From Takakia lepidozioides (Eukaryota > Plantae > Bryophyta), in NCBI GenBank assembly GCA_030704615.1, contig CM060734.1, positions 930,001 to 994,000 on the forward strand: a stretch of 64,000 nucleotides of DNA, read 5' to 3'. Under the pieces are notes generated by a model, which saw only the letters and a program-made list of their open reading frames with translations, did no database searches and had not been told where the DNA came from. The position numbers were made by a program, and so were the translations under genes. Positions 22,811 to 58,333 of the stretch are shown here, piece by piece (position 1 is the stretch's first letter; every line of letters starts with the position of its first letter).

Positions 22811-22864
22811 CTTTATAGACCCCAGACTAGTTTCGCTCAGCGCGTGAGCTCATCAGTGGGAAAG
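22811..22864 (-). ncRNA. Type I hammerhead ribozyme (unit family)
   Basis: Minus strand TCCCA-CTGATGA-GCTCA-cgcgc-TGAGC-GAAA-CTAG-TC/TGGGG: complete core, stem I, 5-bp stem II, minimal palindromic stem III, GUC cleavage triplet. Confidence 0.9.
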
Positions 22865-22895
22865 AAAAGGAATGAGATACAAACCCCACCCCCCG

Positions 22896-22903
22896 CTTAT
22901 ATA
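22896..22903 (-). promoter_or_regulatory. TATA-box-like TATATAAG ~30-35 nt upstream of the hammerhead (present in every unit that spans this position)
   Basis: The same motif and spacing occur in the diverged unit (~42490) and the PLE (~39122, ~43827). Confidence 0.55.
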
Positions 22904-23658
22904 CTACTAGGCGTGAACTGCCTCGTGTGGACAATCTTCCAGTGGATGTCTCGTGAGGAGAAAAACCATCCAACAGATGTCTCGTACGGAGAGAATAGTC
23001 CAAAAAGTCTCGGTGGGAGAAAGTCATCCAATGGATGAAAACAAGTTCTCGACAAGAGAGAACTAGATCCAAAGAATAAAAATCATCCAAATAGTCAATT
23101 GCATATATCTCAAATACAACTAACTCCGTGAGTTTATGACTATGCAACAACCAATTATGCTGAAGTTAGAGCATGTTGTGCAAAGTCGTAAGGGCTGAAA
23201 CCACTTCGAAAGGAACGCACAACTCGTAAGAGCTTTGCACACGCAGACCATCGCGCAACCATCGTCTTGCTAAAGCCTGCAGCTGTGTTGTCCTGAATGT
23301 GTCCAACCACGATCCCCACCTTCCGACCTCCAAGACGAAACACGGCTCGGTCTTCGTATTGTTGCCTCATCACATGAATGAGCAGCTTGGTCAAAAGAAT
23401 GAAGATCAACATCTGCCTCCATTACGTGAAGGCGATTAAAGATGTGTTGCAGCTAACACTATAAGAAAGTTTAGGGTTCACATAAAGCATCAAAACAAGT
23501 GTAGCAGTACAACGCGGATGCACCGGGTGCAAGGTAAACACGATCCGGGCAAACAAGTTTTAGGGGGGCCAGTTATGCACCCCTGGAAAAATTTCAGATC
23601 ATGTGAATCGAAGCTGAAAGGAGAGATCCTGAGAGACATGAAACTAGAATAGAAGTAT

Positions 23659-25500
23659 TTGCAGTATCATCCCACCTGCCAGCTGCGGCATAGATGTTTG
23701 ATAGCAACACATAAGTCGCGCCATCCTGTTCATCCCACTAGAGGATAGATGTTGCCGTTCAGCCATCTCCACATTGCCATGGATTCTGCAGGCACCAAGC
23801 AAGGCCTTCCACACCACAACATCTGGATTTCAGTAGGCCAGTGTGGCTGCATGCAGAGAGAACACATATAAAGGTGATACTGTCCGGCTTCAAGCATTTC
23901 TTTTGCATTCCTTCAAATAGTTGCAGGACCTCCCTATGACAACCATGCTGGGCATATCCTGCGATCATCGCATTCCATGACACCACATTTCATTCAGCCA
24001 TATTGTCAAATACTCACTTTGCATCCTCACTGCACCCACATTTCACATACATGTCCACCAGGGCAGCGTCCAGAATGACATTTGGTACAGTTCCAGCTTT
24101 GATGATGTCACCATGGCGCACCTCTTTACTGGAATGCCATGCATCCATGCCTCCATGGAACACCATGCTCTGCCAGGCTTGCAAACACACACAAACATGA
24201 TATGGTCGGGCTTCACCCCTTCCCCCAGGCCTCCATCCCGCGCTCTGCTGTGCATATCCTGCAAGCATGGTGTTCCATGACACCAAATCTCATTCAGCCA
24301 TATTGTTGAACACTCCCTCCACATCCTCAATGCTCCCACATTTGGCATACATGTCTACGATGGTATTGTTCAGAATCACATCTGGTACAATTCCAGCTTT
24401 GGCGATGCAACCATGCACCTCTTTGCCCTTTTCCAGGGCTGCCAGGCTTGCACACGCAGTGCAAACGCACACAAACGTGATGTGGTCGAGCTTCACCCCT
24501 TTGCACATCATTCCAAGGCCTCCATCCCGCGCCCCTGCTGTGCATACCCTGCAAGCATTGAGTTCCATGACACCACATCTCGTTCAACCGTAGTCTTGAA
24601 AACTCCCTTCGCATCCTTAATGCACCCACATTTGGCATACATGTCCACCAGGGCAGTGTTCAGGATGACATCTGGCACAATTCCAGCTTTGACGATGTCG
24701 CCATGGGCCTCTTTCCCCTTTTCCAGAGCTGCCAGGCTTGCAAACACAAACAAATGTGATGTGGTTGGGCTTCACCCCTTCGCACATCATTTGCTTATAG
24801 GTCTGCAAAGCCTCTATCCCGCACCCTTGCTGTGCATATCATGCAATCATCGCACTCCACAACACCACATCTCGTTCAGCCATACTGTCGAACACTCCCT
24901 TAGCATCCTTGATGCACCCACATTTGACATACATGTCCACCAGGGCAGTGTTCAGCATGACACCGGGTACAATTCCAGATTTGACGATGCAACCATGGAC
25001 CTCTTTGCACTTTTCCAGGCTGCCAGGCTTGCACACGCACTGCAAACGCACACAAACATGATGTGGTTGAGCTTCACCCCTTCCCCCATCATTTGCTGAT
25101 AGGTCTCCAAAGCCCCATCCCGCGCCCCTGCTGTGCACACCCTGCAAGCATCGTGTTCCACGACACCACATCTCGTTCAGCCATAGGTTGAACACTCCCT
25201 TGGCATCCTCAATGCTCCCACATTTGGCATACATGTCCACCAGAGCAGTGTTCAGGATGACATCTGGTACAATTGATGATGTCACCATGGATCTCTTTGC
25301 CAGGGCTGCCAGACGCACTGCAAACGCACAGAAATGTTATGTGGGCGGTTTCACCCCTTCCCCCATCATTTGCTCATAGGTCTCCAAAGCCTCCATCCCG
25401 CACCCCTGCTGTGCATACCCTGCAAACATCACAATCCACCACACCACATCTCGCTCAGCCATAGTGTTCAGAATGACAGGTAATCTGACAGGCATTCACC
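23659..25500 (-). pseudogene. PLS-class PPR protein remnant with partial E domain
   Basis: Repeated VILNTALVDMYAKCG..DA..VF / DVVSWN.M.AGYAQ.G / PDSITFICVLSACSH.GL motifs and ATYVLLSNIYAAAGRWD; many frameshifts. Confidence 0.9.
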
Positions 25501-25805
25501 TTTTTGCCTCGGTTGTCCCACTGAAATGCAACTGCAAACCTATGCAAGAGGCAAATGTGCGTATGAGAACTATTTCACTGGATGCACAGGAGAATAAGAA
25601 CCCTATCTCTGTTTTGCAAGAGAATGGACACACTAGGAACAACTTAGATGCAAATCTCACATGCACTACTCGAAAGGGAGTTTATGGCATGCCGTATAGA
25701 CACAGAGCACATGATCTAAAGCAGGGGATACAAACGCATCTAAAACTCGACAACTTCAAAGGGTGAGACAACGAGGCAAGATCATGCAAAGTAGTAAAGC
25801 CAAAT

Positions 25806-25859
25806 CTTTATAGACCCCAGACTAGTTTCGCTCAGCGCGTGAGCTCATCAGTGGGAAAG
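25806..25859 (-). ncRNA. Type I hammerhead ribozyme (unit family)
   Basis: Core identical to 22811-22864. Confidence 0.9.
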
Positions 25860-25872
25860 AAAAGGAATGAGA

Positions 25873-25959
25873 TGTCGTGCGCATACATATCGCTACACAA
25901 CTACATCGCTGTCCAAACCACACCACACATATATATGCACAATAAAGTAGTCTGCCACA
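25873..25959 (-). repeat. 87-bp 3' terminal repeat (mini-LTR) of element C after the PPT (25961-25971)
   Basis: TGTGGCAG...GCACGACA on the minus strand; diverged homolog of the 85-bp repeat at 10520. Confidence 0.75.
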
Positions 25960-26218
25960 ATCGCCCCCCTAGCTGGTGGATAGGTCCCTCTAACTCTAGA
26001 TAGCTACAATATGTAATAGCCACAGCCGTCCTAAGTCCCCTATCACTGTCCCTATTGTACTCAAATTCTATAGACCAAGAGGCCGGGTACAAGAGTAGCC
26101 CCATCGTTAGTCGCCGTCTTGCAATCTGTGAATTTGAGCCAGGACTTCGTGTATTCAAGGTATCTTGTAGCTGGGCCTTGCGTTGCTTGTTAGCCTTCCA
26201 TGGTTGTATCCACTCCCA

Positions 26219-29200
26219 CTATCCAATGCATTGTGGACATAACCAATCCCCATCCGGAACCATCTCAAGAGGTGGAGTCAAGCATCCCATATGCCAACCT
26301 CTAGAGCATCGATCACACACCAGCATGGTGGCTGCCCCTTTAGCAGACCCACACAACATGCACCTCAAACCAGCAGATACCACTGCCAGGTTTGGGTCAA
26401 TCCTGCCATCGACATTCGGAAGGTGACATGGCGCACAATTACGCACATGGTCCTTCCAAGTTATGCCATCCCGACCCTCCAAGACCAAGACGCCTGAGGG
26501 CAAGACCTCTTGAACCCTCAAAATAACACGTCCTGCAGTCACATCCAGGGTCGTAGGAGCAGTTTGCTGCAGATAGACATAGTCACCAGGGTTGAATCTC
26601 CGGACCCCAGGACGATAGCCCCCACCACGTATGGTAGCATACCTCAACGTATCACGGTGTTGTGCAATGGCAAGGTTCTCGAAAGCCATGGGCATGGCTC
26701 TCTTGAACAACTCTGAACGCTGCTCACATGCACGTGCCCACACGTCCGGATCGTCAAGGTTAAGAACTGTAGCAGCTTCTCTGCGAATGGATGTAGGCAA
26801 ATCCGGCTCTCGGCCAAAGAGAAGAAAATATGGTGAGAAGGAGGCAAGTGATGCTTGTTTGCTGAACCTGTAGCCCATGGCTAACCAGGGTAACTGAAGG
26901 TCCCAATCTCCTAGGTGTCCCTTCTGCAAGCCATACTTGCGCAAACCCCTCTTTACTGTCTGAACAAATCTCTCTGCCAAGCCATCGGCCTCAGGATGAT
27001 CCCGAGAAGTGGTGCGGTGGTCTATCAAGGCCTTGTTACACAAAGCCTGAAACTCCCCAAGAACTCTCTCCCTTGGTCCGTGAGTACCTCAGCTGGAGCA
27101 CCGAATCGGCTAAGCACACAATCCAAGAATGCATACGCAACTCCCTCACTAGCCTTATCAGGCAATGGAACCAATTCAATCCACTTGGAGAAGTGCTCCA
27201 CCATCACCAACACATACTTGTTGTGGCGCATGGTCAGTGGCAACGGCCCTGCGAAGTCAAGACTCCACCTGTAGCCCAATCCCATGATCGGAAGAGGGTG
27301 CAATTGTGGAGTAGGGCGTTGAATGAAGCACGCACCCTGTCACACACCATGCACCTAGCCACAAATTGTTGCACCTCTGTGTGCATACCACGCCACCAAT
27401 ACTGCCCCTGCAGTAGACTATGAGTGCGTCGCACCCCAAAATGCCCCAACTCCTCATGGGCATGCCGCACTAACCGTGCCCGCTGTGTTGGGTGAGGCAC
27501 AATCCTCACTCGACCATCCTCCCACACTCGGAGCAGGTGTGTTTCCTCCCACTTGAACCTCTTGGCTCGTTGTAGGATCCGATCCCTCTCTTTGGCAGTC
27601 ACAGTGGCTGTAGTGTCTCCAGTGCGGAGGGAGTCCAACACAATTGAATCCTCATGTATATCTTTGGCGCCACCTTGCTCATTGCTGGCCTCAGGGTCCT
27701 CAGACACTTGATCTACAGTCATCCCTGTTGCAGGTCCAACCTGGCCTTCCGCTGCCAAGATACACAGAAATGCAGATGCATGCCATCCGGGCACCATCTC
27801 CTCGTCCGTCTCACCATGCCACCGAGCTCCAGTGTCATCCTGCTGGCTCGTGCATGGATTGCGACTCAACCCATCTGCATTGCAATTGACCAAACCCGGT
27901 CGATGCACCACCTGAAAGTCATACTCTTGAAGTATGAGTGCCCACCGTGCAAGCTTCCCCGTAAGTTTGTCTGACTCCATCAACCACTTGAGTGGTTGGT
28001 GATCCGTGACAAGGGTGAAGAGGTTGCCGTATAGATAGCACCTGAAGTGTGCCATGGCCCACACTGCAGCTAAGCATTCTCCCTCATATGAGCTATACTT
28101 AGACTCTGCAGCATTGTTCGAGCGGCTAGCATAAGCCACTACAAACTCTCTTCCCTCATCATCCACCTGTGTGAGCACCGCTCCAAGCCCCAGCATGCTC
28201 CAATCTGTATGCAGCTGGAAAGGACGCCCCCTGATAGGTCATCTCAAGATGGGCGCCGAGGTCAACCTCGCCTTGAGCTCTTGAAAAGCTTGTTCTTGCT
28301 CATCTTCCCACTGCCACTCCTGGTCCACCTTGGTCAGCTTGGTTAGAGCCTTTGCAATGGCACTAAATCCTTAACAAACCGTCTATAATAGTTTGCTAAC
28401 CCCATGAAAGCTCGAACTCGGCTCACATCCGTGGGGCGTGGAACCTGTGCAATGGACTCTACCTTAGTCTGTTGTACCCCCAATCCTCCAGGATATATCA
28501 TGTGACCCAGATACTCAATCTGGTTGTGGAAAAACTTGCACTTGCCCGGATGTAACTTCAATCCGTGCGTCCTCAAGCGCTCAAATACCCCCTGAAGGTG
28601 TCTCTCATGCTCCTCCACCGTAGCACTAAAGATGATGATGTCATCTATGTAGCACCGAGCAAACTCCACCCCTGCTAGAATCCTGTCCATGACTCTTTGA
28701 AACTTAGCGGGAGCGTTTTTAAGCCCAAATGGTAAGAACCGCCACTGGTATAGGCAATCCTTCCCGTGCTCATTGATCCCCCAGAATGCCGTCTTTTGCT
28801 TATCCGCCTCCTTGATCGGCAACTGGTGATATCCGGATCGTAAATCCAACGTGCTAAAGACCATGGAATGCCCAATGGCATCAAAGATCTCCTCTGGTGT
28901 CGGCATGGCATACCTATCGGACTTGGTCTGACGATTTACAGGCCGGTAATCACCGCACATACGTCTCTCCGTCCAATTGCCATAGACATCCTTCTTGGCT
29001 CATCACTGTGGCTGAAGCATACTCTCCACCAGAGAGCTCCACCAAACCTGCCTCCCAGAGATCTTGAGTCCTCATCTGAATCAAAGACCTCTCCATGTCA
29101 CTGTATCTATAGGGTCTCCGAAAGATTGGCGTGTCAGTGGCCAACTCAATACGGATCTCTTGACCCTTCAGTGCTCCCAAGTCTTTCAAACTGAAGGCAA

Positions 29201-29300
29201 AGCAATTCCTGTGAGCCCTCAGGAACCGCCATATACGTCGTCTCTCTCCTCCGGTGACAATGGGTCCAATGTCAGGCTCCCAATTGTGCTCCATAACTGC
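26219..29300 (-). pseudogene. RT, RNase H, integrase and PHD of element C (frameshifted)
   Basis: LPFGLKNAP, YIDDIIIFS, GLGAVLTQ..VAYASR, WSLDFAGP; PHD at 26228-26362. Confidence 0.92.
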
Positions 29301-29659
29301 AACCTTAAGTCCAGTGGGCTTAGGGATAGAGGACGCGTCCCGTGGTTGCTATGCTGCAACCTCTTGAGCAGTACTTCCTTCCTGCTCAGTCAATGACAAG
29401 GCCTCATCCTGCCCCATCATCTCATCATTGAGAACCTCCTCATCCCGAGAAGAATCCCCAACCTCATCCATCACAGCTGCTTTGGCTGCCAACTCCCTCT
29501 GAACCTCGAGCACCTCCCACGTGTGCCATGGATGTCTACACCCCGTGGTCCTCACCGACTCGCCCCCACTCGCTGCCTGTACCGTCTCGGTAGGCAGAGA
29601 GACCGTCAAGGGAAGTGCACTCCGCACTCTACGTTGCTCAGGCATAGCCAAGCTGATAA

Positions 29660-30620
29660 TCCAGGTCAAGCAATTGAGATCCATTGCTTGCCCCAACACC
29701 TGACGACGTGATGCCTCAGAAAGAGAAGGCACCGCCGTGGTCCCAGTGGAAAACCCCATAGCCCGCTCTCACTCATCGGCATTAGGCTCCACTAACTGCT
29801 GCAACTGATTATCCCACAGGAGGCCAGGTCCACCATCCCGAAAAGCATGGGATCCTGAGAAGCTGAGCAGTGTAGGTAATGCTGTCTCGTGGTTGACCCA
29901 CCCTGTTGACCACTGCCAAAGGCGAACGGTCATCGTGTCTCACACGTTGAGACTGCCTCCCTGTGTCCAAAATGCCATCCACGGTGAGGTGGGCTGACCG
30001 CTGCACCCCATCAAATGCATGCTTGAGCAGTGCGGGTGGCATCAAGTTAGTCCACCAAAGCCGTGGACGATGAGCCCGTGACCCCACTGCAGCTGCATCC
30101 AGCAACGCTGCTGACCCAAGCCACGACCGGACTTGATGCACACTGGCCATCACCCTGGCCCGAGAATCACCCATCAGTGGCACATTCTCCAAGATGTATG
30201 CTGGAGATACAGCTTGATGAAGCTGCAAGTGGGCGCAAAACCCGTACCATACCATCCTCAAAACAACACCCGTCCTTGAGTCTCCAACCCTTGCCATGCC
30301 CGGCTTGATGACATCCCTTGGTAGGGGCCAACCTGCCACTACCAGATCAATGGAGCCAACCTGCTCCAAATCCGGCGCCCCCAGCAACGAAATGTCGGCT
30401 GGCAAGGCTTGTTGGTATCCCGAACTGCAGATACTGGCAACAAAGCAGGTACTACTGCTATACAAACCAATAAAACAACTGAGCCCATTGCGCAGTGAGA
30501 CGCTTCGTGCAGTCTCATCCCTCTCCACTACAGGAACGCCTTACTTGCACACACCTCTATAGCACAGCAGCCAATCGGTGCTGATTCCCTCCAAACAAGT
30601 CCAGAAGGCAAATGCCTTCT
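29660..30620 (-). pseudogene. DNMT3/DRM-like C5 cytosine DNA methyltransferase domain within pol (frameshifted)
   Basis: Motif I LLDLFGG(I)ST; II ERDETAR; IV DLVVAGWP(x)QG; VI YILENV; VIII GSRAHRPRLWWTN; IX ERERAMGF..GTT; X SRRQVLGQAMD. Confidence 0.85.
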
Positions 30621-31149
30621 TGGATATTGCCACACAATAGGTGTGGTATCCAATGGTGACAACTGAGGTGGTCCTGGTGCAATACCGCACTCTCCCTCAC
30701 TCTACCGCACTACTCTCTCCTCCTCCTGTCCTCCCCAAAAGCCTCTACCCAGGCTTGTTGCAACCGTTCGATCACAACTGCTGCAAATCCTTGCTCGTAC
30801 CCACATGGAGTTGTGAGCAACCAAAGCAGACAACCCCACCATACCATGCATGTCAATCCTGCTTCTGCTGGAGGTGGCACTCTCTGCATGGGCATGCCTT
30901 CCAGCAACTCTCGGGCCAACTAATGCAGCTGTAAAGGCGGCTAGTGTGGCATGTTGCCCCGCGGGCAGCCGCAATAACCCCAATGAATGTTACAGGGAGC
31001 TGTGCACGACGACCATCCCCTGACTGCCATCCAGTCTATAGAATGCTGACTCCTCCCAAAAGTCCGGGTGAAGCCTATGGGTTACCTGCACTGCCCCACC
31101 AACGAGGACATCGTAAGAGACCGCGTCTGTCCACAATGCCTTGGCTCGC

Positions 31150-31430
31150 ATTACTGAGCCATCGATAGGATGATCCGGCTGCAGTCTAATGGCCAAACTG
31201 ATGTCGTGTCATGCCCCCGAGCCTGCGCTGATCCTCCCAGAGATGTCTGTATCGGAAGGACAAGGCTCCATATCCGCCTCGATAAGGCCCAACCACCTGC
31301 AATAGCACTCCTGCCCAACATCAGTGGCTGAGCTCCCGAGTCCAACAAGACCCGCAGTGGCGGTACTTCTTGCCTGCCGGTCCACTCAAAGAGAAAAATG
31401 CCATCCTGGTTTGTCAACACAAACAACTCC
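31150..31430 (-). pseudogene. Aspartic protease of element C
   Basis: RVLLDSGAQPLMLG. Confidence 0.8.
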
Positions 31431-43739: not shown

Positions 43740-43795
43740 GGTGTTTTATTCCAAACAAGTTTCGCTTGATTGCTCAAGCTCATCAGTGGAACACC
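43740..43795 (-). ncRNA. Type I hammerhead ribozyme (PLE family)
   Basis: Identical to 39035-39090. Confidence 0.9.
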
Positions 43796-45189: not shown

Positions 45190-45214
45190 GGTTTAGGGTT
45201 TAGGGTTTAGGGTT
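45190..45214 (+). repeat. Telomeric tract capping the RT truncation
   Basis: GGTTTAGGGTTTAGGGTTTAGGGTTT. Confidence 0.95.
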
Positions 45215-48200: not shown

Positions 48201-48343
48201 GAGAGAATAGTCCAAAAAATCTCGGTGGAGAAAGTCATCCAGTGGATGAAAACAAGTTCTCGACAAGAGAGAACTAGATCCAAAGAATAAAAATCATCCA
48301 AATAGTCAATTGCACATCTCTCAAATACAACTAACTCCGTGAG
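45215..48343 (-). mobile_element. Array 3: ~2.7 units of ~1155 bp; hammerheads at ~45701-45754, 46859-46912, 48020-48073
   Basis: Head-to-tail units joined at AAAGTTTAGGGTTCACAT; all three share a stem II variant. Confidence 0.9.
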
Positions 48344-48387
48344 TTTAGGGTTTAGGGTTTTAGGGTTAGGGTTTAGGGTTTAGGGTT
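48343..48387 (+). repeat. Telomeric tract
   Basis: About 6 TTTAGGG-type units. Confidence 0.95.
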
Positions 48388-51300
48388 CACATAAAGCGTC
48401 AAAACAAGTGTAGCAGTACAACGCGGATGCACCTGGTGCAAGATAAACACGATCCGGGCAAACGAGTTTTAGGGGGGGCCAGTTATGCACCCTGGAAAAA
48501 TTTCAGATCCTGTGAATCAAAGCTGAAAGGAGAGATCCTGAGAGACAGGAAACTAGAATAGATGTATGCAAGGTGTCCTGAAATGCAACTGCAAACCTAT
48601 GCAAGAGGCAATGTGCGTATGAGAACTATTTCACTGGATGCACAGGAGAATAAGAACCCTATCTCTGTTTTGCAAGAGAATGGACACACTAGGAACAACT
48701 TAGATGCAGATCTCACATGCACTACTCGAGAGGGAGTTTATGGCATGTCGTATAGACACAGAGCACATAACAATGCAATGATCTAAAGCAGGGGATACAA
48801 ACGCATCTAAAACTCGACAACTTCAAAGGGTGAGACCACGAGGCAAGATCATGCAAAGTAGTGAAGCCAAATCTTTATAGACCCCAGACTAGTTTCGCTC
48901 AGCGCGTGAGCTCATCAGTGGGAAAGAAAATGAATGAGATACAAACCCCCCCCCCCCCGCTTATATACTACTAGGAGTGAACTGCCCGTGTGGACAATCT
49001 TCCAGTGGATGTCTCGTGAGGAGAAAAACCATCCAACAAATGTCTCGTACGGAGAGAATAGTCCAAAAAGTCTCGGTGGGAGAAAGTCATCCAGTGGATG
49101 AAAACAGTTCTCGACAAAGAGAGACTAGATCCAAAGAATAAAAATCATCCAAATAGTCAATTGCATATCTCTAAAATACAACTAACTCCGTGAGTTTATG
49201 ACTATGCAACAACCAATTATGCTGAAGTTAGAGCATGTCGTGCAAAGTCGTAAGGGCTGAAACCACTTCGAAAGGAACGCACAACTCGTAAGAGCTTTGC
49301 ACACGCAGACCATCGCGCAACCATCGTCTTGCTAAAGCATGCAGCTGTGTTGTCCTGAACGTGTCCAACCACGATCCCACCTTCCGACCTCCAAGACGAA
49401 ACACGGCTCGGTCTTCGTATTGTTGCCTCATCACATGAATGAGCAGCTTGGTCAAAGAATGAAGATCAACATCTGCCTCCATTACGTGAAGGCGATTAAA
49501 GATGTGTTGCAGCTAACACTTATAGAAAGTTTAGGGTTCACATAAAGCGTCAAAACAAGTGTAGCAGTACAACGCGGATGCACCGGGTGCAAGATAAACA
49601 CGATCCGGGCAAACAAGTTTTAGGGGGGGCCAGTTATGCACCCCTGGAAAAATTTCAGATCCTGTGAATCAAACCTGAAAGGAGAGATCCTGAGAGACAG
49701 GAAACTAGAATAGAAGTATGCGAGGTGTCCTGAAATGCAACTGCAAACCTATGCAAGAGGCAAATGTGCGTATGAGAACTATTTCACTGGATGCACAGGA
49801 GAATAAGAACCCTATCTCTGTTTTGCAAGAGAATGGACACACTAGGAACAACTTAGATGCAGATCTCACATGCACTACTCGAGAGGGAGTTTATGGCATG
49901 TCGTATAGACACAGAGCACATAACAATGCAATGATCTAAAGCAGGGGATACAAACGCATCTAAAACTCGACAACTTCAAAGGTGAGACCACGAGGCAAGA
50001 TCATGCAAAGTAGTGAAGCCAAATCTTTATAGACCCCAGACTAGTTTCGCTCAGCGCGTGAGCTCATCAGTGGGAAAGAAAAGGAATGAGATACAAACCC
50101 CACCCCCCGCTTATATACTACTAGGAGTGAACTGCCTCGTGTGGACAATCTTCCAGTGGATGTCTCGTGAGGAGAAAAACCATCCACAGATGTCTCGTAC
50201 GGAGAGAATAGTCCAAAAAAGTCTCGGTGGGAGAAAGTCATCCAGTGGATGAAAACAAGTTCTCGACAAGAGAGAACTAGATCCAAAGAATAAAAATCAT
50301 CCAAAAGTCAATTGCATATCTCTCAAATACAACTAACTCCGTGAGTTTATGACTATGCAACAACCAATTATGCTGAAGTTAGAGCATGTTGTGCAAAGTC
50401 GTAAGGGCTGAAACCACTTCGAAAGGAACGCACAACTCGTAAGAGCTTTGCACACGCAGACCATCGCGCAACCATCGTCTTGCTAAAGCCTGCAGCTGTG
50501 TTGTCCTGAACGTGTCCAACCACGATCCCCACCTTCCGACCTCCAAGACGAAACACGGCTCGGTCTTCGTATTGTTGCCTCATCACATGAATGAGCAGCT
50601 TGGTCAAAAAATGAAGATCAACATCTGCCTCCATTACGTGAAGGCGATTAAAGATGTGTTGCAGCTAACACTATAAGAAAGTTTAGGGTTCACATAAAGC
50701 GTCAAAACAAGTGTAGCAGTACAACGCGGATGCACCGGGTGCAAGATAAACACGATCCGGGCAAACAAGTTTTGGGGGCCAGTTATGCACCCCTGGAAAA
50801 ATTTCAGATCCTGTGAATCAAACCTGAAAGGAGAGATCCTGAGAGACAGGAAACTAGAATAGAAGTATGCGAGGTGTCCTGAAATGCAACTGCAAACCTA
50901 TGCAAGAGGCAAATGTGCGTATGAGAACTATTTCACTGGATGCACAGGAGAATAAGAACCCTATCTCTGTTTTGCAAGAGAATGGACACACTAGGAACAA
51001 CTTAGATGTAGATCTCACATGCACTACTCGAGAGGGAGTTATGGCATGTCGTATAGACACAGAGCACAAATACAATGCATGATCTAAAGCAGGGGATACA
51101 AACGCATCTAAAACTCGACAACTTCAAAGGGTGAGACCACGAGGCAAGATCATGCAAAGTAGTGAAGCCAAATCTTTATAGACCCCAGACTAGTTTCGCT
51201 CAGCGCGTGAGCTCATCAGTGGGAAAGAAAAGGAATGAGATACAAACCCCCCCCCCCGCTTATATACTACTACTAGGAGTGAACTGCCTCGTGTGGACAA

Positions 51301-51500
51301 TCTTCCAGTGGATGTCTCGTGAGGAGAAAAACCATCCAAGATGTCTCGTACGGAGAGAATAGTCCAAAAAGTCTCGGTGGGAGAAAGTCATCCCAGTGGA
51401 TGAAAACAAGTTCTCGACAAGAGAGAACTAGATCCAAAGAATAAAAATCATCCAAATAGTCAATTGCATATCTCTCAAATACAACTAACTCCGTGAGTTT
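48388..51500 (-). mobile_element. Array 4: ~2.7 units; hammerheads at ~48873-48926, 50025-50078, 51174-51227
   Basis: Same unit; ends at the same GAGTTTA site as array 3. Confidence 0.9.
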
Positions 51501-51638
51501 ATGGTTAGGGTTTTAGGTTAGGGTTTATGGTTTAGGGTTCACATAAAGCTCGAAAACAAGGTTTAGGGTTTAGGGTTTAGGGTTTAGGGGTTAGGGTTAG
51601 GGTTTAGGGGTTAGGGTTAGGGTTTAGGGTTTAGGGTT
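51497..51638 (+). repeat. Telomeric tract containing a ~21-nt abortive unit start (51540-51560)
   Basis: TTTAGGG variants flank CACATAAAGCTCGAAAACAAG. Confidence 0.9.
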
Positions 51639-54600
51639 CACATAAAGCGTCAAAACAAGTGTAGCAGTACAACGCGGATGCACCGGGTGCAAGATAAACA
51701 CGATCCGGGCAAACAAGTTTTAGGGGGGCCAGTTATGCACCCCTGGAAAAATTTCAGATCCTGTGAATCAAACCTGAAAGGAGAGATCCTGAGAGACAGG
51801 AAACTAGAATAGAAATATGCGAGGTGTCCTGAAATGCAACTGCAAACCTATGCAAGAGGCAAATGTGCGTATGAGAACTATTTCACTGGATGGACACAGG
51901 AGAATAAGAACCCTATCTCTGTTTTGCAAGAGAATGGACACACTAGGAACAACTTAGATGCAGATCTCACATGCACTACTCGAAAGGGAGTTTATGGCAT
52001 AGAATAGAAGTATGCGAGGTGTCCTGAAATGCAACTGCAAACTTATGCAAGAGGCAAATGTGCGTATGAGAACTATTTCACTGGATGCACAGGAGAATAA
52101 GAACCCTATCTCTGTTTTGCAAGAGAATGGACACACTAGGAACAACTTAGATGCAGATCTCACATGCACTACTCGAAAGGGAGTTTATGGCATGCCGTAT
52201 AGACACAGAGCACATAACAATGCAATGATCTAAAGCAGGGGATACAAACGCATCTAAAACTCGACAACTTCAAAGGGTGAGACCACGAGGCAAGATCATG
52301 CAAAGTAGTGAAGCCAAATCTTTATAGACCCCAGACTAGTTTCGCTCAGCGCGTGAGCTCATCAGTGGGAAAGAAAAGGAATGAGATACAAACCCCACCC
52401 CCCGCTTATATACTACTAGGAGTGAACTGCCTCGTGTGGACAATCTTCCAGTGGATGTCTCGTGAGGAGAAAAACCATCCAAGAGATGTCTCGTACGGAG
52501 AGAATAGTCCAAAAAGTCTCGGTGGGAGAAAGTCATCCAGTGGATGAAAACAAGTTCTCGACAAGAGAGAACTAGATCCAAAGAATAAAAATCATCCAAA
52601 TAGTCAATTGCATATCTCTCAAATACAACTAACTCCGTGAGTTTATGACTATGCAACAACCAATTATGCTGAAGTTAGAGCATGTTGTGCAAAGTCGTAA
52701 GGGCTGAAACCACTTCGAAAGGAACGCACAACTCGTAAGAGCTTTGCACACGCAGACCATCGCGCAACCATCGTCTTGCTAAAGCCTGCAGCTGTGTTGT
52801 CCTGAACGTGACCAACCACGATCCCCACCTTCCGACCTCCAAGACGAAACACGGCTCGGTCTTCGTATTGTTGCCTCATCACATGAATGAGCAGCTTGGT
52901 CAAAAGAATGAAGATCAACATCTGCCTCCATTACGTGAAGGCGATTAAAGATGTGTTGCAGCTAACACTGTAAGAAAGTTTAGGGTTCACATAAAGCGTC
53001 AAAACAAGTGTAGCAGTACAACGCGGATGCACCGGGTGCAAGATAAACACGATCCGGGCAAACAAGTTTTAGGGGGGCCAGTTATGCACCCCTGGAAAAA
53101 TTTCAGATCCTGTGAATCAAACCTGAAAGGAGAGATCCTGAGAGACAGGAAACTAGAATAGAAATATGCGAGGTGTCCTGAAATGCAACTGCAAACCTAT
53201 GCAAGAGGCAAATGTGCGTATGAGAACTATTTCACTGGATGCACAGGAGAATAAGAACCCTATCTCTGTTTTGCAAGAGAATGGACACACTAGGAACAAC
53301 TTAGATGCAGATCTCACATGCACTACTCGAAAGGGAGTTTATGGCATAGAATAGAAGTATGCGAGGTGTCCTGAAATGCAACTGCAAACTTATGCAAGAG
53401 GCAAATGTGCGTATGAGAACTATTTCACTGGATGCAGGAGAATAAGAACCCTATCTCTGTTTTGCAAGAGAATGGACACACTAGGAACAACTTAGATGCA
53501 GATCTCACATGCACTACTCGAAAGGGAGTTTATGGCATGCCGTATAGACACAGAGCACATAACAATGCAATGATCTAAAGCAGGGGATACAAACGCATCT
53601 AAAACTCGACAACTTCAAAGGGTGAGACCACGAGGCAAGATCATGCAAAGTAGTGAAGCCAAATCTTTATAGACCCCAGACTAGTTTCGCTCAGCGCGTG
53701 AGCTCATCAGTGGGAAAGAAAAGGAATGAGATACAAACCCACCCCCCGCTTATATACTACTAGGAGTGAACTGCCTCGTGTGGACAATCTTCCAGTGGAT
53801 GTCTCGTGAGGAGAAAAACCATCCAAGAGATGTCTCGTACGGAGAGAATAGTCCAAAAAGTCTCGGTGGGAGAAAGTCATCCAGTGGATGAAAACAAGTT
53901 CTCGACAAGAGAGAACTAGATCCAAAGAATAAAAATCATCCAAATAGTCAATTGCATATCTCTCAAATACAACTAACTCCGTGAGTTTATGACTATGCAA
54001 CAACCAATTATGCTGAAGTTAGAGCATGTTGTGCAAAGTCGTAAGGGCTGAAACCACTTCGAAAGGAACGCACAACTCGTAAGAGCTTTGCACACGCAGA
54101 CCATCGCGCAACCATCGTCTTGCTAAAGCCTGCAGCTGTGTTGTCCCGAACGTGACCAACCACGATCCCCACCTTCCGACCTCCAAGACGAAACACGGCT
54201 CGGTCTTCGTATTGTTGCCTCATCACATGAATGAGCAGCTTGGTCAAAAGAATGAAGATCAACATCTGCCTCCATTACGTGAAGGCGATTAAAGATGTGT
54301 TGCAGCTAACACTGTAAGAAAGTTTAGGGTTCACATAAAGCGTCAAAACAAGTGTAGCAGTACAACGCGGATGCACCGGGTGCAAGATAAACACGATCCG
54401 GGCAAACAAGTTTTAGGGGGGCCAGTTATGCACCCCTGGAAAAATTTCAGATCCTGTGAATCAAACCTGAAAGGAGAGATCCTGAGAGACAGGAAACTAG
54501 AATAGAAATATGCGAGGTGTCCTGAAATGCAACTGCAAACCTATGCAGAGGCAAATGTGCGTATGAGAACTATTTCACTGGATGCACAGGAGAATAAGAA

Positions 54601-57600
54601 CCCTATCTCTGTTTTGCAAGAGAATGGACACACTAGGAACAACTTAGATGCAGATCTCACATGCACTACTCGAAAGGGAGTTTATGGCATAGAATAGAAG
54701 TATGCGAGGTGTCCTGAAATGCAACTGCAAACTTATGCAAGAGGCAAATGTGCGTATGAGAACTATTTCACTGGATGCACAGGAGAATAAGAACCCTATC
54801 TCTGTTTTGCAAGAGAATGGACACACTAGGAACAACTTAGATGCAGATCTCACATGCACTACTCGAAAGGGAGTTTATGGCATGCCGTATAGACACAGAG
54901 CACATAACAACAATGCAATGATCTAAAGCAGGGGATACAAACGCATCTAAAACTCGACAACTTCAAAGGGTGAGACCACGAGGCAAGATCATGCAAAGTA
55001 GTGAAGCCAAATCTTTATAGACCCCAGACTAGTTTCGCTCAGCGCGTGAGCTCATCAGTGGGAAAGAAAAGGAATGAGATACAAACCCCACCCCCCGCTT
55101 ATATACTACTAGGAGTGAACTGCCTCGTGTGGACAATCTTCCAGTGGATGTCTCGTGAGGAGAAAAACCATCCAAGAGATGTGTCTCGTACGGAGAGAAT
55201 AGTCCAAAAAGTCTCGGTGGGAGAAAGTCATCCAGTGGATGAAAACAAGTTCTCGACAAGAGAGAACTAGATCCAAAGAATAAAAATCATCCAAATAGTC
55301 AATTGCATATCTCTCAAATACAACTAACTCCGTGAGTTTGACTATGCAACAACCAATTATGCTGAAGTTAGAGCATGTTGTGCAAAGTCGTAAGGGCTGA
55401 AACCACTTCGAAATGAACGCACAACTCGTAAGAGCTTTGCACACGCAGACCATCGCGCAACCACCATCGTCTTGCTAAAGCCTGCAGCTGTGTTGTCCCG
55501 AACGTGACCAACCACGATCCCCACCTTCCGACCTCCAAGACGAAACACGGCTCGGTCTTCGTATTGTTGCCTCATCACATGAATGAGCAGCTTGGTCAAA
55601 AGAATGAAGATCAACATCTGCCTCCATTACGTGAAGGCGATTAAAGATGTGTTGCAGCTAACACTGTAAGAAAGTTTAGGGTTCACATAAAGCGTCAAAA
55701 CAAGTGTAGCAGTACAACGCGGATGCACCGGGTGCAAGATAAAACACGATCCGGGCAAACAAGTTTTAGGGGGCCAGTTATGCACCCCTGGAAAAATTTC
55801 AGATCCTGTGAATCAAACCTGAAAGGAGAGATCCTGAGAGACAGGAAACTAGAATAGAAATATGCGAGGTGTCCTGAAATGCAACTGCAAACCTATGCAA
55901 GAGGCAAATGTGCGTATGAGAACTATTTCACTGGATGCACAGGAGAATAAGAACCCTATCTCTGTTTTGCAAGAGAATGGACACACTAGGAACAACTTAG
56001 ATGCAGATCTCACATGCACTACTCGAAAGGGAGTTTATGGCATAGAATAGAAGTATGCGAGGTGTCCTGAAATGCAACTGCAAACTTATGCAAGAGGCAA
56101 ATGTGCGTATGAGAACTATTTCACTGGATGCACAGGAGAATAAGAACCCTATCTCTGTTTTGCAAGAGAATGGACACACTAGGAACAACTTAGATGCAGA
56201 TCTCACATGCACTACTCGAAAGGGAGTTTATGGCATGCCGTATAGACACAGAGCAACACATAACAATGCAATGATCTAAAGCAGGGGATACAAACGCATC
56301 TAAAACTCGACAACTTCAAAGGGTGAGACCACGAGGCAAGATCATGCAAAGTAGTGAAGCCAAATCTTTATAGACCCCAGACTAGTTTCGCTCAGCGCGT
56401 GAGCTCATCAGTGGGAAAGAAAAGGAATGAGATACAAACCCCACCCCACCCGCTTATATACTACTAGGAGTGAACTGCCTCGTGTGGACAATCTTCCAGT
56501 GGATGTCTCGTGAGGAGAAAAACCATCCAAGAGATGTCTCGTACGGAGAGAATAGTCCAAAAAGTCTCGGTGGGAGAAAGTCATCCAGTGGATGAAAACA
56601 AGTTCTCGACAAGAGAGAACTAGATCCAAAGAATAAAAATCATCCAAATAGTCAATTGCATATCTCTCAAATACAACTAACTCCGTGAGTTTATGACTAT
56701 GCAACAACCAATTATGCTGAAGTTAGAGCATGTTGTGCAAAGTCGTAAGGGCTGAAACCACTTCGAAATGAACGCACAACTCGTAAGAGCTTTGCACACG
56801 CAGACCATCGCGCAACCATCGTCTTGCTAAAGCCTGCAGCTGTGTTGTCCGAACGTGACCAACCACGATCCCCACCTTCCGACCTCCAAGACGAAACACG
56901 GCTCGGTCTTCGTATTGTTGCCTCATCACATGAATGAGCAGCTTGGTCAAAAGAATGAAGATCAACATCTGCCTCCATTACGTGAAGGCGATTAAAGATG
57001 TGTTGCAGCTAACACTGTAAGAAAGTTTAGGGTTCACATAAAGCGTCAAAACAAGTGTAGCAGTACAACGCGGATGCACCGGGTGCAAGATAAACACGAT
57101 CCGGGCAAACAAGTTTTAGGGGGGCCAGTTATGCACCCCTGGAAAAATTTCAGATCCTGTGAATCAAACCTGAAAGGAGAGATCCTGAGAGACAGGAAAC
57201 TAGAATAGAAATATGCGAGGTGTCCTGAAATGCAACTGCAAACCTATGCAAGAGGCAAATGTGCGTATGAGAACTATTTCACTGGATGCACAGGAGAATA
57301 AGAACCCTATCTCTGTTTTGCAAGAGAATGGACACACTAGGAACAACTTAGATGCAGATCTCACATGCACTACTCGAAAGGGAGTTTATGGCATAGAATA
57401 GAAGTATGCGAGGTGTCCTGAAATGCAACTGCAAACTTATGCAAGAGGCAAATGTGCGTATGAGAACTATTTCACTGGATGCACAGGAGAATAAGAACCT
57501 ATCTCTGTTTTGCAAGAGAATGGACACACTAGGAACAACTTAGATGCAGATCTCACATGCACTACTCGAAAGGGAGTTTATGGCATGCCGTATAGACACA

Positions 57601-58333
57601 GAGCACATAACAATGCAATGATCTAAAGCAGGGGATACAAACGCATCTAAAACTCGACAACTTCAAAGGGTGAGACCACGAGGCAAGATCATGCAAAGTA
57701 GTGAAGCCAAATCTTTATAGACCCCAGACTAGTTTCGCTCAGCGCGTGAGCTCATCAGTGGGAAAGAAAAGAATGAGATACAAACCCCACCCCCCGCTTA
57801 TATACTACTAGGAGTGAACTGCCTCGTGTGGACAATCTTCCAGTGGATGTCTCGTGAGGAGAAAAACCATCCAAGAGATGTCTCGTACGGAGAGAATAGT
57901 CCAAAAAGTCTCGGTGGGAGAAAGTCATCCAGTGGATGAAAACAAGTTCTCGACAAGAGAGAACTAGATCCAAAGAATAAAAATCATCCAAATAGTCAAT
58001 TGCATATCTCTCAAATACAACTAACTCCGTGAGTTTATGACTATGCAACAACCAATTATGCTGAAGTTAGAGCATGTTGTGCAAAGTCGTAAGGGCTGAA
58101 ACCACTTCGAAATGAACGCACAACTCGTAAGAGCTTTGCACACGCAGACCATCGCGCAACCATCGTCTTGCTAAAGCCTGCAGCTGTGTTGTCCCGAACG
58201 TGACCAACCACGATCCCCACCTTCCGACCTCCAAGACGAAACACGGCTCGGTCTTCGTATTGTTGCCTCATCACATGAATGAGCAGCTTGGTCAAAAAGA
58301 ATGAAGATCACATCTGCCTCCATTACGTGAAGG
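51639..58333 (-). mobile_element. Array 5: ~5 units of ~1345 bp (two 193-bp sub-repeats each); hammerheads at ~52320-52373, 53665-53718, 55013-55066, 56366-56419, 57713-57766
   Basis: Head-to-tail units running into the assembly gap. Confidence 0.9.

What the first reader, a model, noticed from the sequence alone, without database searches (positions are those of the whole stretch)
22811..57766. Seventeen type I hammerhead ribozymes in three families with covarying stems
There are 14 copies in the main unit (one with a mutated core), 1 in the diverged unit and 2 in the PLE. The core CUGAUGA..GAAA..UH is constant, while stem II (GCUCA/UGAGC vs GCUUGA/UCAAGC) and stem I (UCCCA/UGGGG vs UUCCA/UGGAA) change compensatorily. 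Stem III is minimal and, in the non-coding units, palindromic (ACUAGU). Known PLE hammerheads of this form cleave as dimers, which would favour cleavage in multimeric transcripts such as these arrays would make.
Basis: partly seen in the sequence, partly recalled or inferred. Interest (0 to 1): 0.85.

Follow-up and report, generated by a model that had tools for sequence, protein, structure and literature searches.

The report
Hammerhead ribozymes in telomere-attached plant retroelements
The window holds 17 copies (16 with an intact core) of a small self-cutting RNA motif, carried by jumping genes and a gene-less derivative that were repeatedly copied onto telomere repeats of a plant chromosome; the motif is a known kind, but the gene-less, multi-unit, telomere-primed form is not described for plants in the papers I could search.

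Summary
Observation confirmed. Seventeen type I hammerhead (HHR) motifs lie on the minus strand, 16 with an intact CUGAUGA..GAAA..UH core and one core mutant.

- **Independent test.** A covariance model built only from HHRs of related elements in other plants or samples finds exactly these 17 (31-45 bits; next hit 11.5).
- **Covariation.** Across 12 lineages helices I and II covary, and the helix III hexamer stays palindromic while its sequence changes. That fits cleavage as a dimer.
- **Rfam.** No hammerhead model reaches its gathering score.
- **Carriers.** Two endonuclease-less Penelope-like element (PLE) families and a 1.15-1.35 kb ORF-less derivative.
- **Layout.** Eight head-to-tail segments each end on short TTTAGGG blocks. 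Each join is at an AACCCTAAAC site that is internal to the tandem non-coding unit, 0.5-0.8 kb 3' of the HHR in one-sub-repeat copies.
- **Untested.** Every copy runs through at least one HHR, so templates were uncleaved or religated. Self-cleavage could not be tested; the only runs were contigs.

HHRs in telomeric plant PLEs are published for Selaginella. The ORF-less arrays and the distant priming site are a new variant. First-stage notes, untested here, report similar systems on other pieces of this genome.

The parts
57722..57763 (-). HHR, main unit, array C (cleavage after C57727)
   Evidence: 40.3 bits
56375..56416 (-). HHR, main unit, array C
   Evidence: 38.5 bits
55022..55063 (-). HHR, main unit, array C
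53674..53715 (-). HHR, main unit, array C
52329..52370 (-). HHR, main unit, array C
51183..51224 (-). HHR, main unit, array B
50034..50075 (-). HHR, main unit, array B
48882..48923 (-). HHR, main unit, array B
48029..48070 (-). HHR, main unit, array A; stem II closing pair is A.C (U to C variant shared by all three array A copies)
46868..46909 (-). HHR, main unit, array A (same variant)
45710..45751 (-). HHR, main unit, array A (same variant)
43749..43791 (-). HHR of PLE-a copy 1 (GUU site, stem II GCUUGA/UCAAGC, extended stem I)
   Evidence: 45.3 bits
42407..42450 (-).
   Evidence: 43.9 bits
40770..40811 (-). HHR with mutated core (CUUAUGA, GAAAU), array D; predicted inactive
   Evidence: 30.8 bits
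39044..39086 (-). HHR of PLE-a copy 2
   Evidence: 45.3 bits
25815..25856 (-). HHR, main unit, array E
22820..22861 (-). HHR, main unit, array E
51639..58333 (-). Array C: at least 5 tandem 1.35-kb ORF-less units (two 193-bp sub-repeats each), cut off by the 500-N gap
48388..51503 (-). Array B: 0.3 + 2 + 0.45 units of 1.15 kb
45217..48347 (-). Array A: 0.3 + 2 + 0.45 units of 1.15 kb
42923..45188 (-). PLE-a copy 1, 5'-truncated: last 377-380 codons of the RT ORF (YIDD motif, stop at 44047-44049), then TATA, HHR and an 831-nt 3' region
41881..42902 (-). PLE-b, 5'-truncated: last ~50 codons of a second RT ORF, then TATA, HHR and a 532-nt 3' region; 64-70% identical to the ORF-less unit
39510..41854 (-). 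Array D: about 1.9 ORF-less units, with extra 193-bp sub-repeats in the 3' part
38218..39459 (-). PLE-a copy 2, 98.5% identical to copy 1; its 5' end falls on a telomere-like CCCTAAACCCTA motif inside the RT ORF
21947..38133 (-). Array E: about 2.5 ORF-less units, interrupted by a Gypsy element (25874-37482) and a 1.86-kb insertion (23659-25520)
51498..51638 (+). TTTAGGG-type block between arrays C and B; contains a ~21-32-nt fragment of the unit's 3' end (about 51530-51560), read as an aborted copying event
48343..48387 (+). telomeric block between arrays B and A
45189..45216 (+). telomeric block between array A and PLE-a copy 1
42903..42922 (+). telomeric block between PLE-a copy 1 and PLE-b
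41855..41880 (+). telomeric block between PLE-b and array D
39460..39509 (+). telomeric block between array D and PLE-a copy 2
38136..38217 (+). telomeric block (degenerate) between PLE-a copy 2 and array E
21920..21946 (+). innermost telomeric block, joined to 144-bp tandem repeats on its left
46364..46382 (-). Example of the telomere-complementary site internal to a tandem unit (..CTTTATGTG-AACCCTAAAC..); the homologous position is the 3' junction of arrays A, B, C and D (array E joins a few bases upstream)
50111..50117 (-). Example of the TATATAA box that starts 47 nt upstream of CUGAUGA; also present in PLE-a (48 nt), PLE-b (53 nt) and most relatives

Best explanation
These are genuine type I hammerhead ribozyme sequences with a minimal helix III. 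They belong to a TATA-HHR module found 3' of the RT gene in a land-plant lineage of endonuclease-less, telomere-attaching Penelope-like elements.

The window holds two such PLE families (PLE-a twice, PLE-b once, all 5'-truncated). It also holds 14 copies of an ORF-less deletion derivative of a PLE-b-like element.

Shown here:
- Eight head-to-tail segments each end on a short (CCCTAAA)n block.
- In four of the five ORF-less arrays the join is exactly at an AACCCTAAAC site that is internal to the tandem unit; array E joins a few bases upstream of it. The PLE copies join at their own fixed 3' end. The join lies 0.5-0.8 kb 3' of the last HHR in copies with one sub-repeat.
- Every segment reads through at least one HHR cleavage site.

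Inferred mechanism:
1. The G-rich telomeric 3' end pairs with this site on the RNA and primes the PLE reverse transcriptase.
2. Copying proceeds 5'-wards through one to five or more unit lengths.
3. Transcripts start at the TATA box just upstream of each HHR.
4. Two HHRs on a multimeric transcript pair through their palindromic A-NNNN-U hexamers into a double hammerhead and cut after GUC or GUU. [quoted passage not shown]
5. Those RNAs can be religated into circles. Templates for the observed copies were either uncleaved multimers or religated circles.
For: - **Motif.** Exact core in 16 of 17 copies. A covariance model built only from 9 relatives finds exactly the 17 copies.
- **Covariation.** Helices I and II covary and the helix III palindrome is kept over 12 lineages.
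- **Same module in relatives.** The RT stop, a TATA-like box, the HHR and then an AACCCTAAAC site occur in Cryptomeria, Selaginella and unnamed plant-associated contigs. Several of these assemble as circular permutations.
- **RT.** YIDD motif. Homologues of 560-636 aa have no endonuclease family listed. A family profile hits RT structures.
- **Junctions.** Constant 3' ends on telomere repeats and variable 5' ends. A ~21-32-nt aborted copy sits inside a telomere block.
- **Origin of the ORF-less unit.** 64-70% identical to PLE-b on both sides of the HHR.
- **Literature.** EN- PLEs of Selaginella carry type I HHRs (PMC4209133). PLE HHRs with a short palindromic helix III act as dimers (PMC6765202). 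PLE RT can start internally on its template (PMC11167929).
Against: - No Rfam hammerhead model reaches its gathering score. The best are Hammerhead_3 at 20.8 bits (cutoff 48.5) and HH9 at 15.7 bits (cutoff 52).
- No cleavage evidence. The only runs were Logan contigs, which cannot show RNA ends.
- No segment in the window starts at a cleavage site, so none of the copied templates was cut and left linear.
- Published minimal PLE HHRs cleave poorly even as dimers. One PLE inserts without cleavage, and no RNA-seq ends were seen at its site (PMC4209133, PMC11167929).
- The PLE-a hexamer ACUUGU has two central U.U mismatches.
- PLE membership of the RT rests on homology to Selaginella elements and on context, not on a comparison with a reference PLE RT.
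- The locus is internal in the scaffold and ends at an N gap, so it may not be a present-day chromosome end.
Confidence: 0.72

Rival explanations
1. The motifs are conserved structural or protein-binding RNA elements of the PLE pseudo-LTR, or hitch-hiking parasites of it, and do not self-cleave to any useful extent in vivo. The arrays come from read-through multimeric transcripts and later unequal crossing-over, with no processing step.
For: - Every genomic copy reads through its HHR sites.
- Array B is heterogeneous: B1 and B2 differ at 16 substituted columns, about six of them an alignment shift, and are not sister units. That does not fit copying of one circular monomer.
- In array C a derived variant is shared by neighbouring units only (column 282), as unequal crossing-over would give.
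- A PLE tested in vitro does not need HHR cleavage, and no RNA ends were seen at its site (PMC11167929).
- PLE HHRs cleave poorly in vitro (PMC4209133).
Against: - All 13 catalytic-core positions are invariant across 12 lineages whose RTs are only 39-71% identical, while the stems change by compensation and the intermolecular palindrome is kept. A mere binding site would not need the catalytic nucleotides or a self-complementary hexamer.
- The one copy with a core mutation sits in an old, decayed array.
Confidence: 0.2
2. A sub-hypothesis about how the arrays form. Each multi-unit array is the product of rolling-circle reverse transcription of one HHR-processed, ligated circular unit RNA (the retrozyme model), primed by the telomeric overhang.
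For: - Variants are fixed within an array: six private to array A, including the HHR stem II U to C in all three copies, and three shared by all units of array C.
- The four full units of array C differ by only 0-2 substitutions in ~660 nt.
- The number of 193-bp sub-repeats is constant among the units of array C.
- The priming site is internal to the unit, so a copy longer than ~0.5 kb needs a template that continues past the cleavage site.
- Unit-length, circularly permuted contigs of relatives.
- The model is already proposed for retrozymes (PMC7761336, PMC6765202).
Against: - Array B is not homogeneous.
- Arrays A and B have the same 5' end and the same unit count, which also fits duplication or copying of a linear multimer.
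- Tandem DNA and circular RNA cannot be told apart from contigs.
- Excess folding energy of the unit RNA is not strand-specific: z -3.4 sense, -3.0 antisense.
Confidence: 0.35
3. Chance matches to a short consensus inside an ordinary satellite repeat.
For: Fourteen of the 17 are copies of one repeat unit, so the raw count overstates independence. Rfam reports nothing at gathering score.
Against: - Three diverged lineages in the window and nine more elsewhere keep the core and compensate in the stems.
- A model trained elsewhere gives E 1e-7 to 1e-9 here and nothing else above 11.5 bits in 128 kb of both strands.
Confidence: 0.01

Closest known systems
Type I hammerheads in pseudo-LTRs of telomere-associated, endonuclease-deficient PLEs of Selaginella moellendorffii (Gladyshev & Arkhipova 2007; Cervera & de la Pena 2014, PMC4209133)
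   Same: - RT family: a Selaginella protein is 50% identical to the window's RT fragment. Its locus carries CCCTAAA blocks and a type I HHR with an ACCGGU hexamer.
- No endonuclease.
- Head-to-tail copies on TTTAGGG repeats.
   Different: - The paper calls the Selaginella HHRs 'canonical' with a typical helix III. Here, and in the Selaginella copy I read, helix III is 2 bp with a 2-nt loop.
- The ORF-less multi-unit derivative is not described there.
- The window's genome is another plant.
Athena PLEs and Terminons of bdelloid rotifers (Arkhipova et al. 2017, as reviewed in PMC6431247)
   Same: - EN- PLE RT and HHR motif.
- 5'-truncated copies separated by short telomeric repeats in long head-to-tail chains.
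- Attachment by telomere-complementary RNA sequence.
   Different: - In Terminons the reverse-complement telomeric stretch lies immediately downstream of the HHR, which is the 3'-terminal fold. Here the site is a single ~10-nt AACCCTAAAC, internal to the repeating unit, and it lies 0.3-0.8 kb downstream of the HHR in one-sub-repeat copies and relatives.
- The elements here are small (about 4 kb in relatives), not giant.
Metazoan non-LTR retrozymes (Cervera & de la Pena 2020, PMC7229834; Li et al. 2026 bioRxiv 10.64898/2026.07.22.740005)
   Same: - ORF-less tandem repeats, each with a type I HHR with weak helix III.
- Thought to be non-autonomous derivatives of PLE pseudo-LTRs that spread through unit RNAs and multimeric cDNA.
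   Different: - Those are 170-400 nt and animal-only in the papers I could search, and they carry no recognisable priming motif (PMC7761336).
- These units are 1.15-1.35 kb, in a plant, sit on telomere repeats, and carry an explicit telomere-complementary priming site shared with the autonomous PLE.
Plant LTR retrozymes (Cervera et al. 2016, as reviewed in PMC7761336 and PMC11722881)
   Same: Plant, non-autonomous, about 1 kb, HHR-flanked unit RNA, proposed circular intermediate.
   Different: Those have type III HHRs inside LTRs, a tRNA-Met primer-binding site, a polypurine tract and target-site duplications, and use Ty3/Gypsy RT. None of these is present here.
Minimal PLE hammerheads that cleave as dimers (Lunse, Weinberg & Breaker 2017, cited in PMC6765202 and PMC11722881; the paper itself was not readable here)
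   Same: Type I topology, a very short palindromic helix III, and tandem layout.
   Different: I could not read the paper, so I made no feature-by-feature comparison. Activity of the present sequences is untested.

Membership tests
Hammerhead ribozyme, type I | Conserved catalytic core CUGANGA ... GAAA ... UH with a cleavable NUH triplet | tested here: met
   16 of 17 copies are exact (GUC or GUU). One copy reads CUUAUGA and GAAAU. The core is invariant in 12 lineages.
Hammerhead ribozyme, type I | Helices I and II flank the core and are supported by covariation; helix I is open (type I topology) | tested here: met
   Helix I is 90% paired, with 4 of 5 pairs showing double changes. Helix II is 81% paired, with 5 of 6. 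0 of 500 shuffles reach the observed score. RNAalifold predicts both helices.
Hammerhead ribozyme, type I | Helix III closing the three-way junction | tested here: inconclusive
   The monomer offers only A-U and C-G around a 2-nt loop, which is not a stable hairpin. The hexamer is self-complementary in 11 of the 12 aligned lineages, with 5 different sequences, so helix III can form between two copies. A nearest-neighbour energy for the double hammerhead could not be computed because the topology is crossed.
Hammerhead ribozyme, type I | Match to a curated Rfam hammerhead model at gathering score | tested here: not met
   No hit at gathering score and none in a 36-kb E-value search. In 100-nt searches the best are Hammerhead_3 at 20.8 bits against 48.5 and HH9 at 15.7 bits against 52. 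The shortfall lies in the missing helix III.
Hammerhead ribozyme, type I | [quoted passage not shown] | not testable with these tools
   The only runs on offer were Logan contigs, with none on record as RNA.
Endonuclease-deficient Penelope-like elements (Athena/Coprina-type) | PLE/telomerase-related reverse transcriptase | tested here: inconclusive
   - RT is shown: YIDD motif, and a profile of 28 homologues hits RT structures (8bgj E 8e-6, group II and retron RTs; TERT only E about 0.1).
- The local Pfam copy gives nothing above cutoff.
- The link to PLEs is by 50% identity to a Selaginella protein in a locus with the published features.
- No reference PLE RT was available for a tree.
Endonuclease-deficient Penelope-like elements (Athena/Coprina-type) | No GIY-YIG endonuclease domain | tested here: met
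   The ORF stops about 45 codons after the last conserved block. Full-length homologues are 560-636 aa, and no endonuclease family is listed for them.
Endonuclease-deficient Penelope-like elements (Athena/Coprina-type) | 5'-truncated copies in head-to-tail chains, each joined at its 3' end to short telomeric repeats in the orientation expected for priming by the G-strand | tested here: met
   Eight segments show constant 3' junctions and variable 5' ends. TTTAGGG is on the + strand and the elements on the - strand.
Non-LTR retrozymes | ORF-less tandem units, each with a type I HHR, related to a PLE pseudo-LTR | tested here: met
   - Units of 1146-1353 bp.
- No ORF1 or RT similarity in the units by tblastn.
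- 64-70% identity to the PLE-b region around the HHR.
Non-LTR retrozymes | Accumulation of unit-length circular RNA | not testable with these tools
   No raw RNA reads were available.

The most novel reading that the evidence does not exclude
The ORF-less unit may be a dedicated template RNA rather than a mere parasite. In this reading it is transcribed from its own TATA promoter (possibly snRNA-type), trimmed by the double hammerhead and circularised. The PLE RT then uses it, primed at a telomerase-template-like AACCCUAAAC site, to add several kilobases to a chromosome end in one rolling-circle event. That would be a retrozyme-based way of capping or healing chromosome ends in a plant, working alongside telomerase.
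Probability: 0.2. Interest if true: 0.85.

Novelty: new variant of a known kind. Interest (0 to 1): 0.55.

Why it matters
Hammerheads in telomeric plant PLEs were reported once, for Selaginella. This locus and its relatives add the following.

- **Breadth.** The same RT-TATA-HHR-priming-site module occurs in at least one conifer and Selaginella. Homologous RT proteins also occur in Ginkgo.
- **Selection on dimer formation.** The intermolecular helix III palindrome is kept while its sequence changes. This is sequence-level evidence that dimer formation is selected.
- **A deducible primer.** For animal non-LTR retrozymes the priming step is unknown. Here an ORF-less, retrozyme-like derivative carries a visible primer-binding site (AACCCUAAAC) and a visible primer (the telomeric G-strand). 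Questions about how such elements are copied, and whether from circles or from multimers, become directly testable in a plant.
- **An interpretive trap.** Short interstitial TTTAGGG blocks in plant assemblies may be records of such events.

Tried and rejected
- **Rfam.** Searching at gathering score and in E-value mode on the whole region returned nothing. Only 100-nt searches gave sub-threshold hammerhead hits.
- **RNA evidence.** One run search and one read-laying run found three small runs, all kept as contigs. They show related sequence at about 95% identity but no ends, joints or strand. This is no test of cleavage.
- **Thermodynamic folding.** The MFE of 56-63-nt HHR pieces, alone and as dimers, gives alternative pairings, as expected for a core held by non-canonical contacts. 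The double-hammerhead structure is crossed and could not be scored.
- **Whole-unit folding.** z = -3.4 for the sense strand but -3.0 for the antisense strand, so it is not evidence for a structured RNA. A circular-fold version timed out.
- **A withdrawn idea.** I first thought arrays A and B begin at the homologue of the telomere-like motif inside the RT ORF. The alignment shows they begin near the homologue of the RT stop codon instead. Only PLE-a copy 2 starts on that motif.
- **snRNA-type upstream element (USE).** A match within 2 mismatches lies upstream of the TATA box in PLE-a, L007 and L011. It is absent from the main unit, PLE-b and the other relatives, so the promoter type stays open.
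- **ORF1.** ORF1 proteins of relatives find nothing in the window. No full-length element is present here.
- **Structures and papers.** A single-sequence PDB search with a full-length homologue found nothing. Gladyshev 2007, Arkhipova 2017 and Lunse 2017 are not held, so I used them only through papers that cite them.


Full report
**1. The observation**

A pattern search for CTGATGA-N4-30-GAAA gives 17 hits, against 1.64 +/- 1.09 in dinucleotide shuffles (0 of 100 shuffles reach 17). Sixteen hits lie on the minus strand between 22.8 and 57.8 kb, and one is an unrelated + strand hit at 18318.

Reading the flanks adds the seventeenth copy at 40775-40806. Its core is CUUAUGA and GAAAU.
- 14 copies in one repeat unit: GCUCA/UGAGC stem II, UCCCA/UGGGG stem I, ACUAGU hexamer, GUC site.
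- 1 copy in a diverged relative (GUU site).
- 2 copies in a coding element: GCUUGA/UCAAGC, UUCCA/UGGAA with a distal extension of stem I, ACUUGU hexamer, GUU site.

The three copies of array A share a U to C change that opens the last pair of stem II.

**2. Are they hammerheads?**

Rfam is silent at gathering score and in an E-value search of the 36-kb region. In 100-nt searches the best matches are hammerhead families far below their cutoffs: Hammerhead_3 at 20.8 bits against 48.5, and HH9 at 15.7 bits against 52. The alignments show the shortfall is the near-absent helix III.

I therefore looked for independent evidence. The RT fragment next to one copy (44050-45189, minus strand) has homologues in Cryptomeria japonica (55% identity), Selaginella moellendorffii (50%), Ginkgo and many unnamed contigs.

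I fetched 15 loci for eleven of these proteins. Thirteen of them carry a CUGANGA..GAAA motif of the same form on the RT strand, about 0.15-0.9 kb from the RT gene on the linear or circularised contig (downstream of the stop wherever the contig reaches that far). The two without one (L006, L008) end within about 110 bp of the RT stop. In L009 and L005 the HHR found is the one upstream of the ORFs.

On an alignment of 12 lineages, 3 from the window and 9 from elsewhere:
- The 13 core positions are invariant.
- 87.5% of cells pair, and 11 of 14 pairs show changes on both sides.
- No shuffle out of 500 reaches the observed covariation. Sliding the partners by one to three columns drops pairing to 26-44%.
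- RNAalifold predicts helices I and II on its own.

A covariance model built only from the nine outside sequences finds exactly the 17 window copies. Sixteen score 37.1-45.3 bits (E 6.5e-9 to 8e-7), the mutant scores 30.8 bits, and the next hit is 11.5 bits (E 3). I take the identification as secure.

**3. Helix III**

In the monomer only A15.1-U16.1 and one C-G pair can form, around a 2-nt loop. The hexamer A-NNNN-U is ACUAGU, ACAUGU, ACCGGU, AUGCAU or AUCGAU in different lineages. It is a perfect palindrome in 11 of the 12 aligned lineages; the two inner pairs change on both sides.

That is the signature expected if helix III forms between two ribozyme copies. This is the double hammerhead proposed for newt, viroid and PLE motifs (PMC4209133; PMC6765202, which also cites Lunse et al. 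2017). The exception is the window's PLE-a (ACUUGU, two central U.U).

Energy calculations were not informative.

**4. What carries them**

Mapping one unit against the window and reading the junctions gives eight consecutive segments on the minus strand. From the distal (right) end:

| Segment | Coordinates | Content |
|---|---|---|
| Array C | 51639-58333 | at least 5 units of 1.35 kb, cut off by a 500-N gap |
| Array B | 48388-51503 | 0.3 + 2 + 0.45 units of 1.15 kb |
| Array A | 45217-48347 | 0.3 + 2 + 0.45 units of 1.15 kb |
| PLE-a copy 1 | 42923-45188 | 5'-truncated coding element |
| Array D | 39510-41854 | about 1.9 units |
| PLE-a copy 2 | 38218-39459 | 98.5% identical to copy 1 |
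| Array E | 21947-38133 | about 2.5 units |

Array E is interrupted by a Gypsy element (25874-37482; RT, RNase H, integrase and PHD domains; 4-5-bp target duplication). It also holds a 1.86-kb insertion (23659-25520).

Each segment ends at its 3' side on a 20-141-bp block of (CCCTAAA)n, read as TTTAGGG on the + strand. The 5' ends vary: unit positions 849/851, 77 and 462, or inside the RT ORF. This is the layout of endonuclease-less, telomere-attaching PLEs (PMC8557442, PMC6431247).

The orientation is the one expected if the G-strand 3' end primes cDNA synthesis. That step is an inference.

The RT ORF has YIDD. It stops without an endonuclease domain. Its full-length homologues are 560-636 aa and usually preceded by a 427-665-aa ORF1. 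A profile of 28 homologues hits RT structures, with TERT only weakly. I could not place it in a PLE tree.

**5. The 'diverged unit' and the ORF-less unit**

The segment 41881-42902 opens with an uninterrupted reading frame. That frame matches the last ~50 residues of the RT of PLE-a and of the relatives, down to the stop. It is therefore a 5'-truncated copy of a second coding family, PLE-b.

The 14-copy unit has no similarity to ORF1 or to the RT. It is 64% identical to PLE-b from the RT stop to the HHR, and 70% identical from the HHR to the 3' end. It is an internally deleted, non-autonomous derivative of a PLE-b-like element.

**6. The priming site**

In arrays A-D the ORF-less unit joins the telomere at ..CTTTATGTG followed by AACCCTAAAC; array E joins a few bases upstream. 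In the tandem arrays the same 19 nt occur inside every unit and continue into unit sequence.

| Element | Distance from cleavage site to 3' junction |
|---|---|
| One-sub-repeat ORF-less units | 498-499 nt |
| PLE-b | 532 nt |
| PLE-a | 831 nt |
| Units with extra 193-bp sub-repeats | 695-1265 nt |

(All.) Relatives have an AACCCTAAAC-type site 0.3-0.5 kb downstream of their HHR and just upstream of ORF1.

A ~21-32-nt piece of the unit's 3' end sits inside the telomere block at about 51530-51560. It looks like an aborted copying event.

This differs from rotifer Terminons, where the telomere-complementary stretch lies immediately after the HHR (PMC6431247). It fits the finding that a PLE RT starts internally on its template (PMC11167929).

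Because the site is internal, any copy longer than about 0.5 kb must come from a template that continues across a cleavage site. The template was therefore an uncleaved multimer or a religated circle.

**7. Circle or multimer?**

Variants fixed within arrays favour one recent source per array:
- Six variants are private to array A, and three are shared by all units of array C.
- The four full units of array C differ by 0-2 substitutions in ~660 nt.

Other observations point to linear multimers, duplication or later unequal crossing-over:
- B1 and B2 differ at 16 substituted columns, about six of them a local alignment shift, and do not group together.
- One derived variant in array C is shared only by neighbouring units.
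- Arrays A and B have the same 5' end and the same unit count.

Several relatives assemble as circularly permuted, unit-length contigs. Contigs cannot tell tandem DNA from circular RNA. I leave this open at about one in three for rolling-circle copying.

**8. Promoter**

A TATATAA box starts 47-53 nt upstream of CUGAUGA in all three window families. TATA-like boxes lie 39-60 nt upstream in nearly all relatives. A normal start 25-35 nt downstream of the box would put the HHR at the very 5' end of the transcript; this is an inference from general knowledge of TATA promoters.

A plant snRNA-type upstream element (TCCCACATCG-like, two mismatches or fewer) precedes the TATA in PLE-a, L007 and L011 only.

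**9. RNA evidence**

None was obtainable. The run search returned three small runs kept as contigs, none on record as RNA. Laid on one unit (1101 bases), they show related sequence and nothing about ends.

**10. Comparison and novelty**

Already known:
- Type I HHRs in the pseudo-LTRs of telomeric EN- PLEs of Selaginella (PMC4209133).
- Dimeric action of PLE HHRs with short palindromic helix III (PMC6765202).
- Telomere attachment by complementary repeats (PMC6431247).
- ORF-less PLE-derived tandem HHR repeats in animals (PMC7229834; bioRxiv 10.64898/2026.07.22.740005).

Not found in the papers I could search:
- A plant counterpart of the non-LTR retrozyme.
- Its stacking as multi-unit arrays on telomere repeats.
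- A priming site placed internally, far from the HHR.
- The conserved TATA-HHR arrangement.

I therefore rate the hammerheads themselves as new members of a known kind and the system as a new variant. First-stage notes of this scan describe similar chains on other pieces of the same genome. I did not see those sequences.

Noticed in passing
window 25874-37482: An 11.6-kb Ty3/Gypsy element (minus strand: RVT_1, RNase H, integrase zinc finger, PHD finger) is inserted into an ORF-less unit 17 nt upstream of the CUGAUGA box of the HHR at 25851, with a 4-5-bp target duplication (GAGA/GAGAT). BLAST of its first 3 kb against its last 3 kb finds no terminal direct repeat.
   Followed up: partly
window 23659-25520: A 1.86-kb insertion inside a unit of array E is made largely of about 4.3 copies of a 292-bp tandem repeat. 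No Pfam hit for its 228-aa ORF.
   Followed up: partly
window 44140-44165 and 39445-39470; L006:1630, L008:3433, L010:3486: The RT gene itself contains a telomere-like CCCTAAACCCTA(A/G/C)A stretch about 45 codons before its stop. It is conserved in several relatives. PLE-a copy 2 is 5'-truncated exactly there, so its cDNA would have ended in a perfect telomeric repeat.
   Followed up: partly
window 46440-46460, 41960-41985, 42990-43010: A C-run followed by (T)TAAA (GGCCCCCC-TAAAAC and similar) lies 75-95 nt upstream of the priming site in all three families, and loosely in some relatives. It could be a second telomere-like or RT-binding box.
   Followed up: no
window 43865-43875 (PLE-a); L007 and L011 upstream of their HHRs: A plant snRNA-type upstream sequence element (TCCCATATCG, TCCCACATTG) lies 32-38 bp upstream of the TATA box that faces the HHR. 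It is absent from the ORF-less unit.
   Followed up: partly
window 20587-21900: Immediately proximal to the innermost telomere block: 72/144/268-bp tandem repeats (GCCATTTTTCCAGTTCGGGGCC...) and two long T runs (25 and 60 T).
   Followed up: no
window 58334-58833: A 500-N gap cuts array C at its distal end. The sequence beyond it (58834-64000) has no unit or telomere similarity, so the chain may end at a scaffolding join rather than at a true neighbour.
   Followed up: partly
window 11112-11322 and 19008-19224: Two similar arrays of a 10-bp CACAGYCTAT-type repeat about 7.9 kb apart flank integrase and RNase H ORFs (8331-9743, 13765-14343). They are probably parts of another LTR-type element.
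   Followed up: no
L001-L003, L010, L011, L014: Contigs of related two-ORF elements from public runs and metagenomes are unit-length. They are circular permutations of each other or carry 29-119-nt end overlaps. The elements therefore occur as tandem arrays or circles in those samples too.
   Followed up: partly
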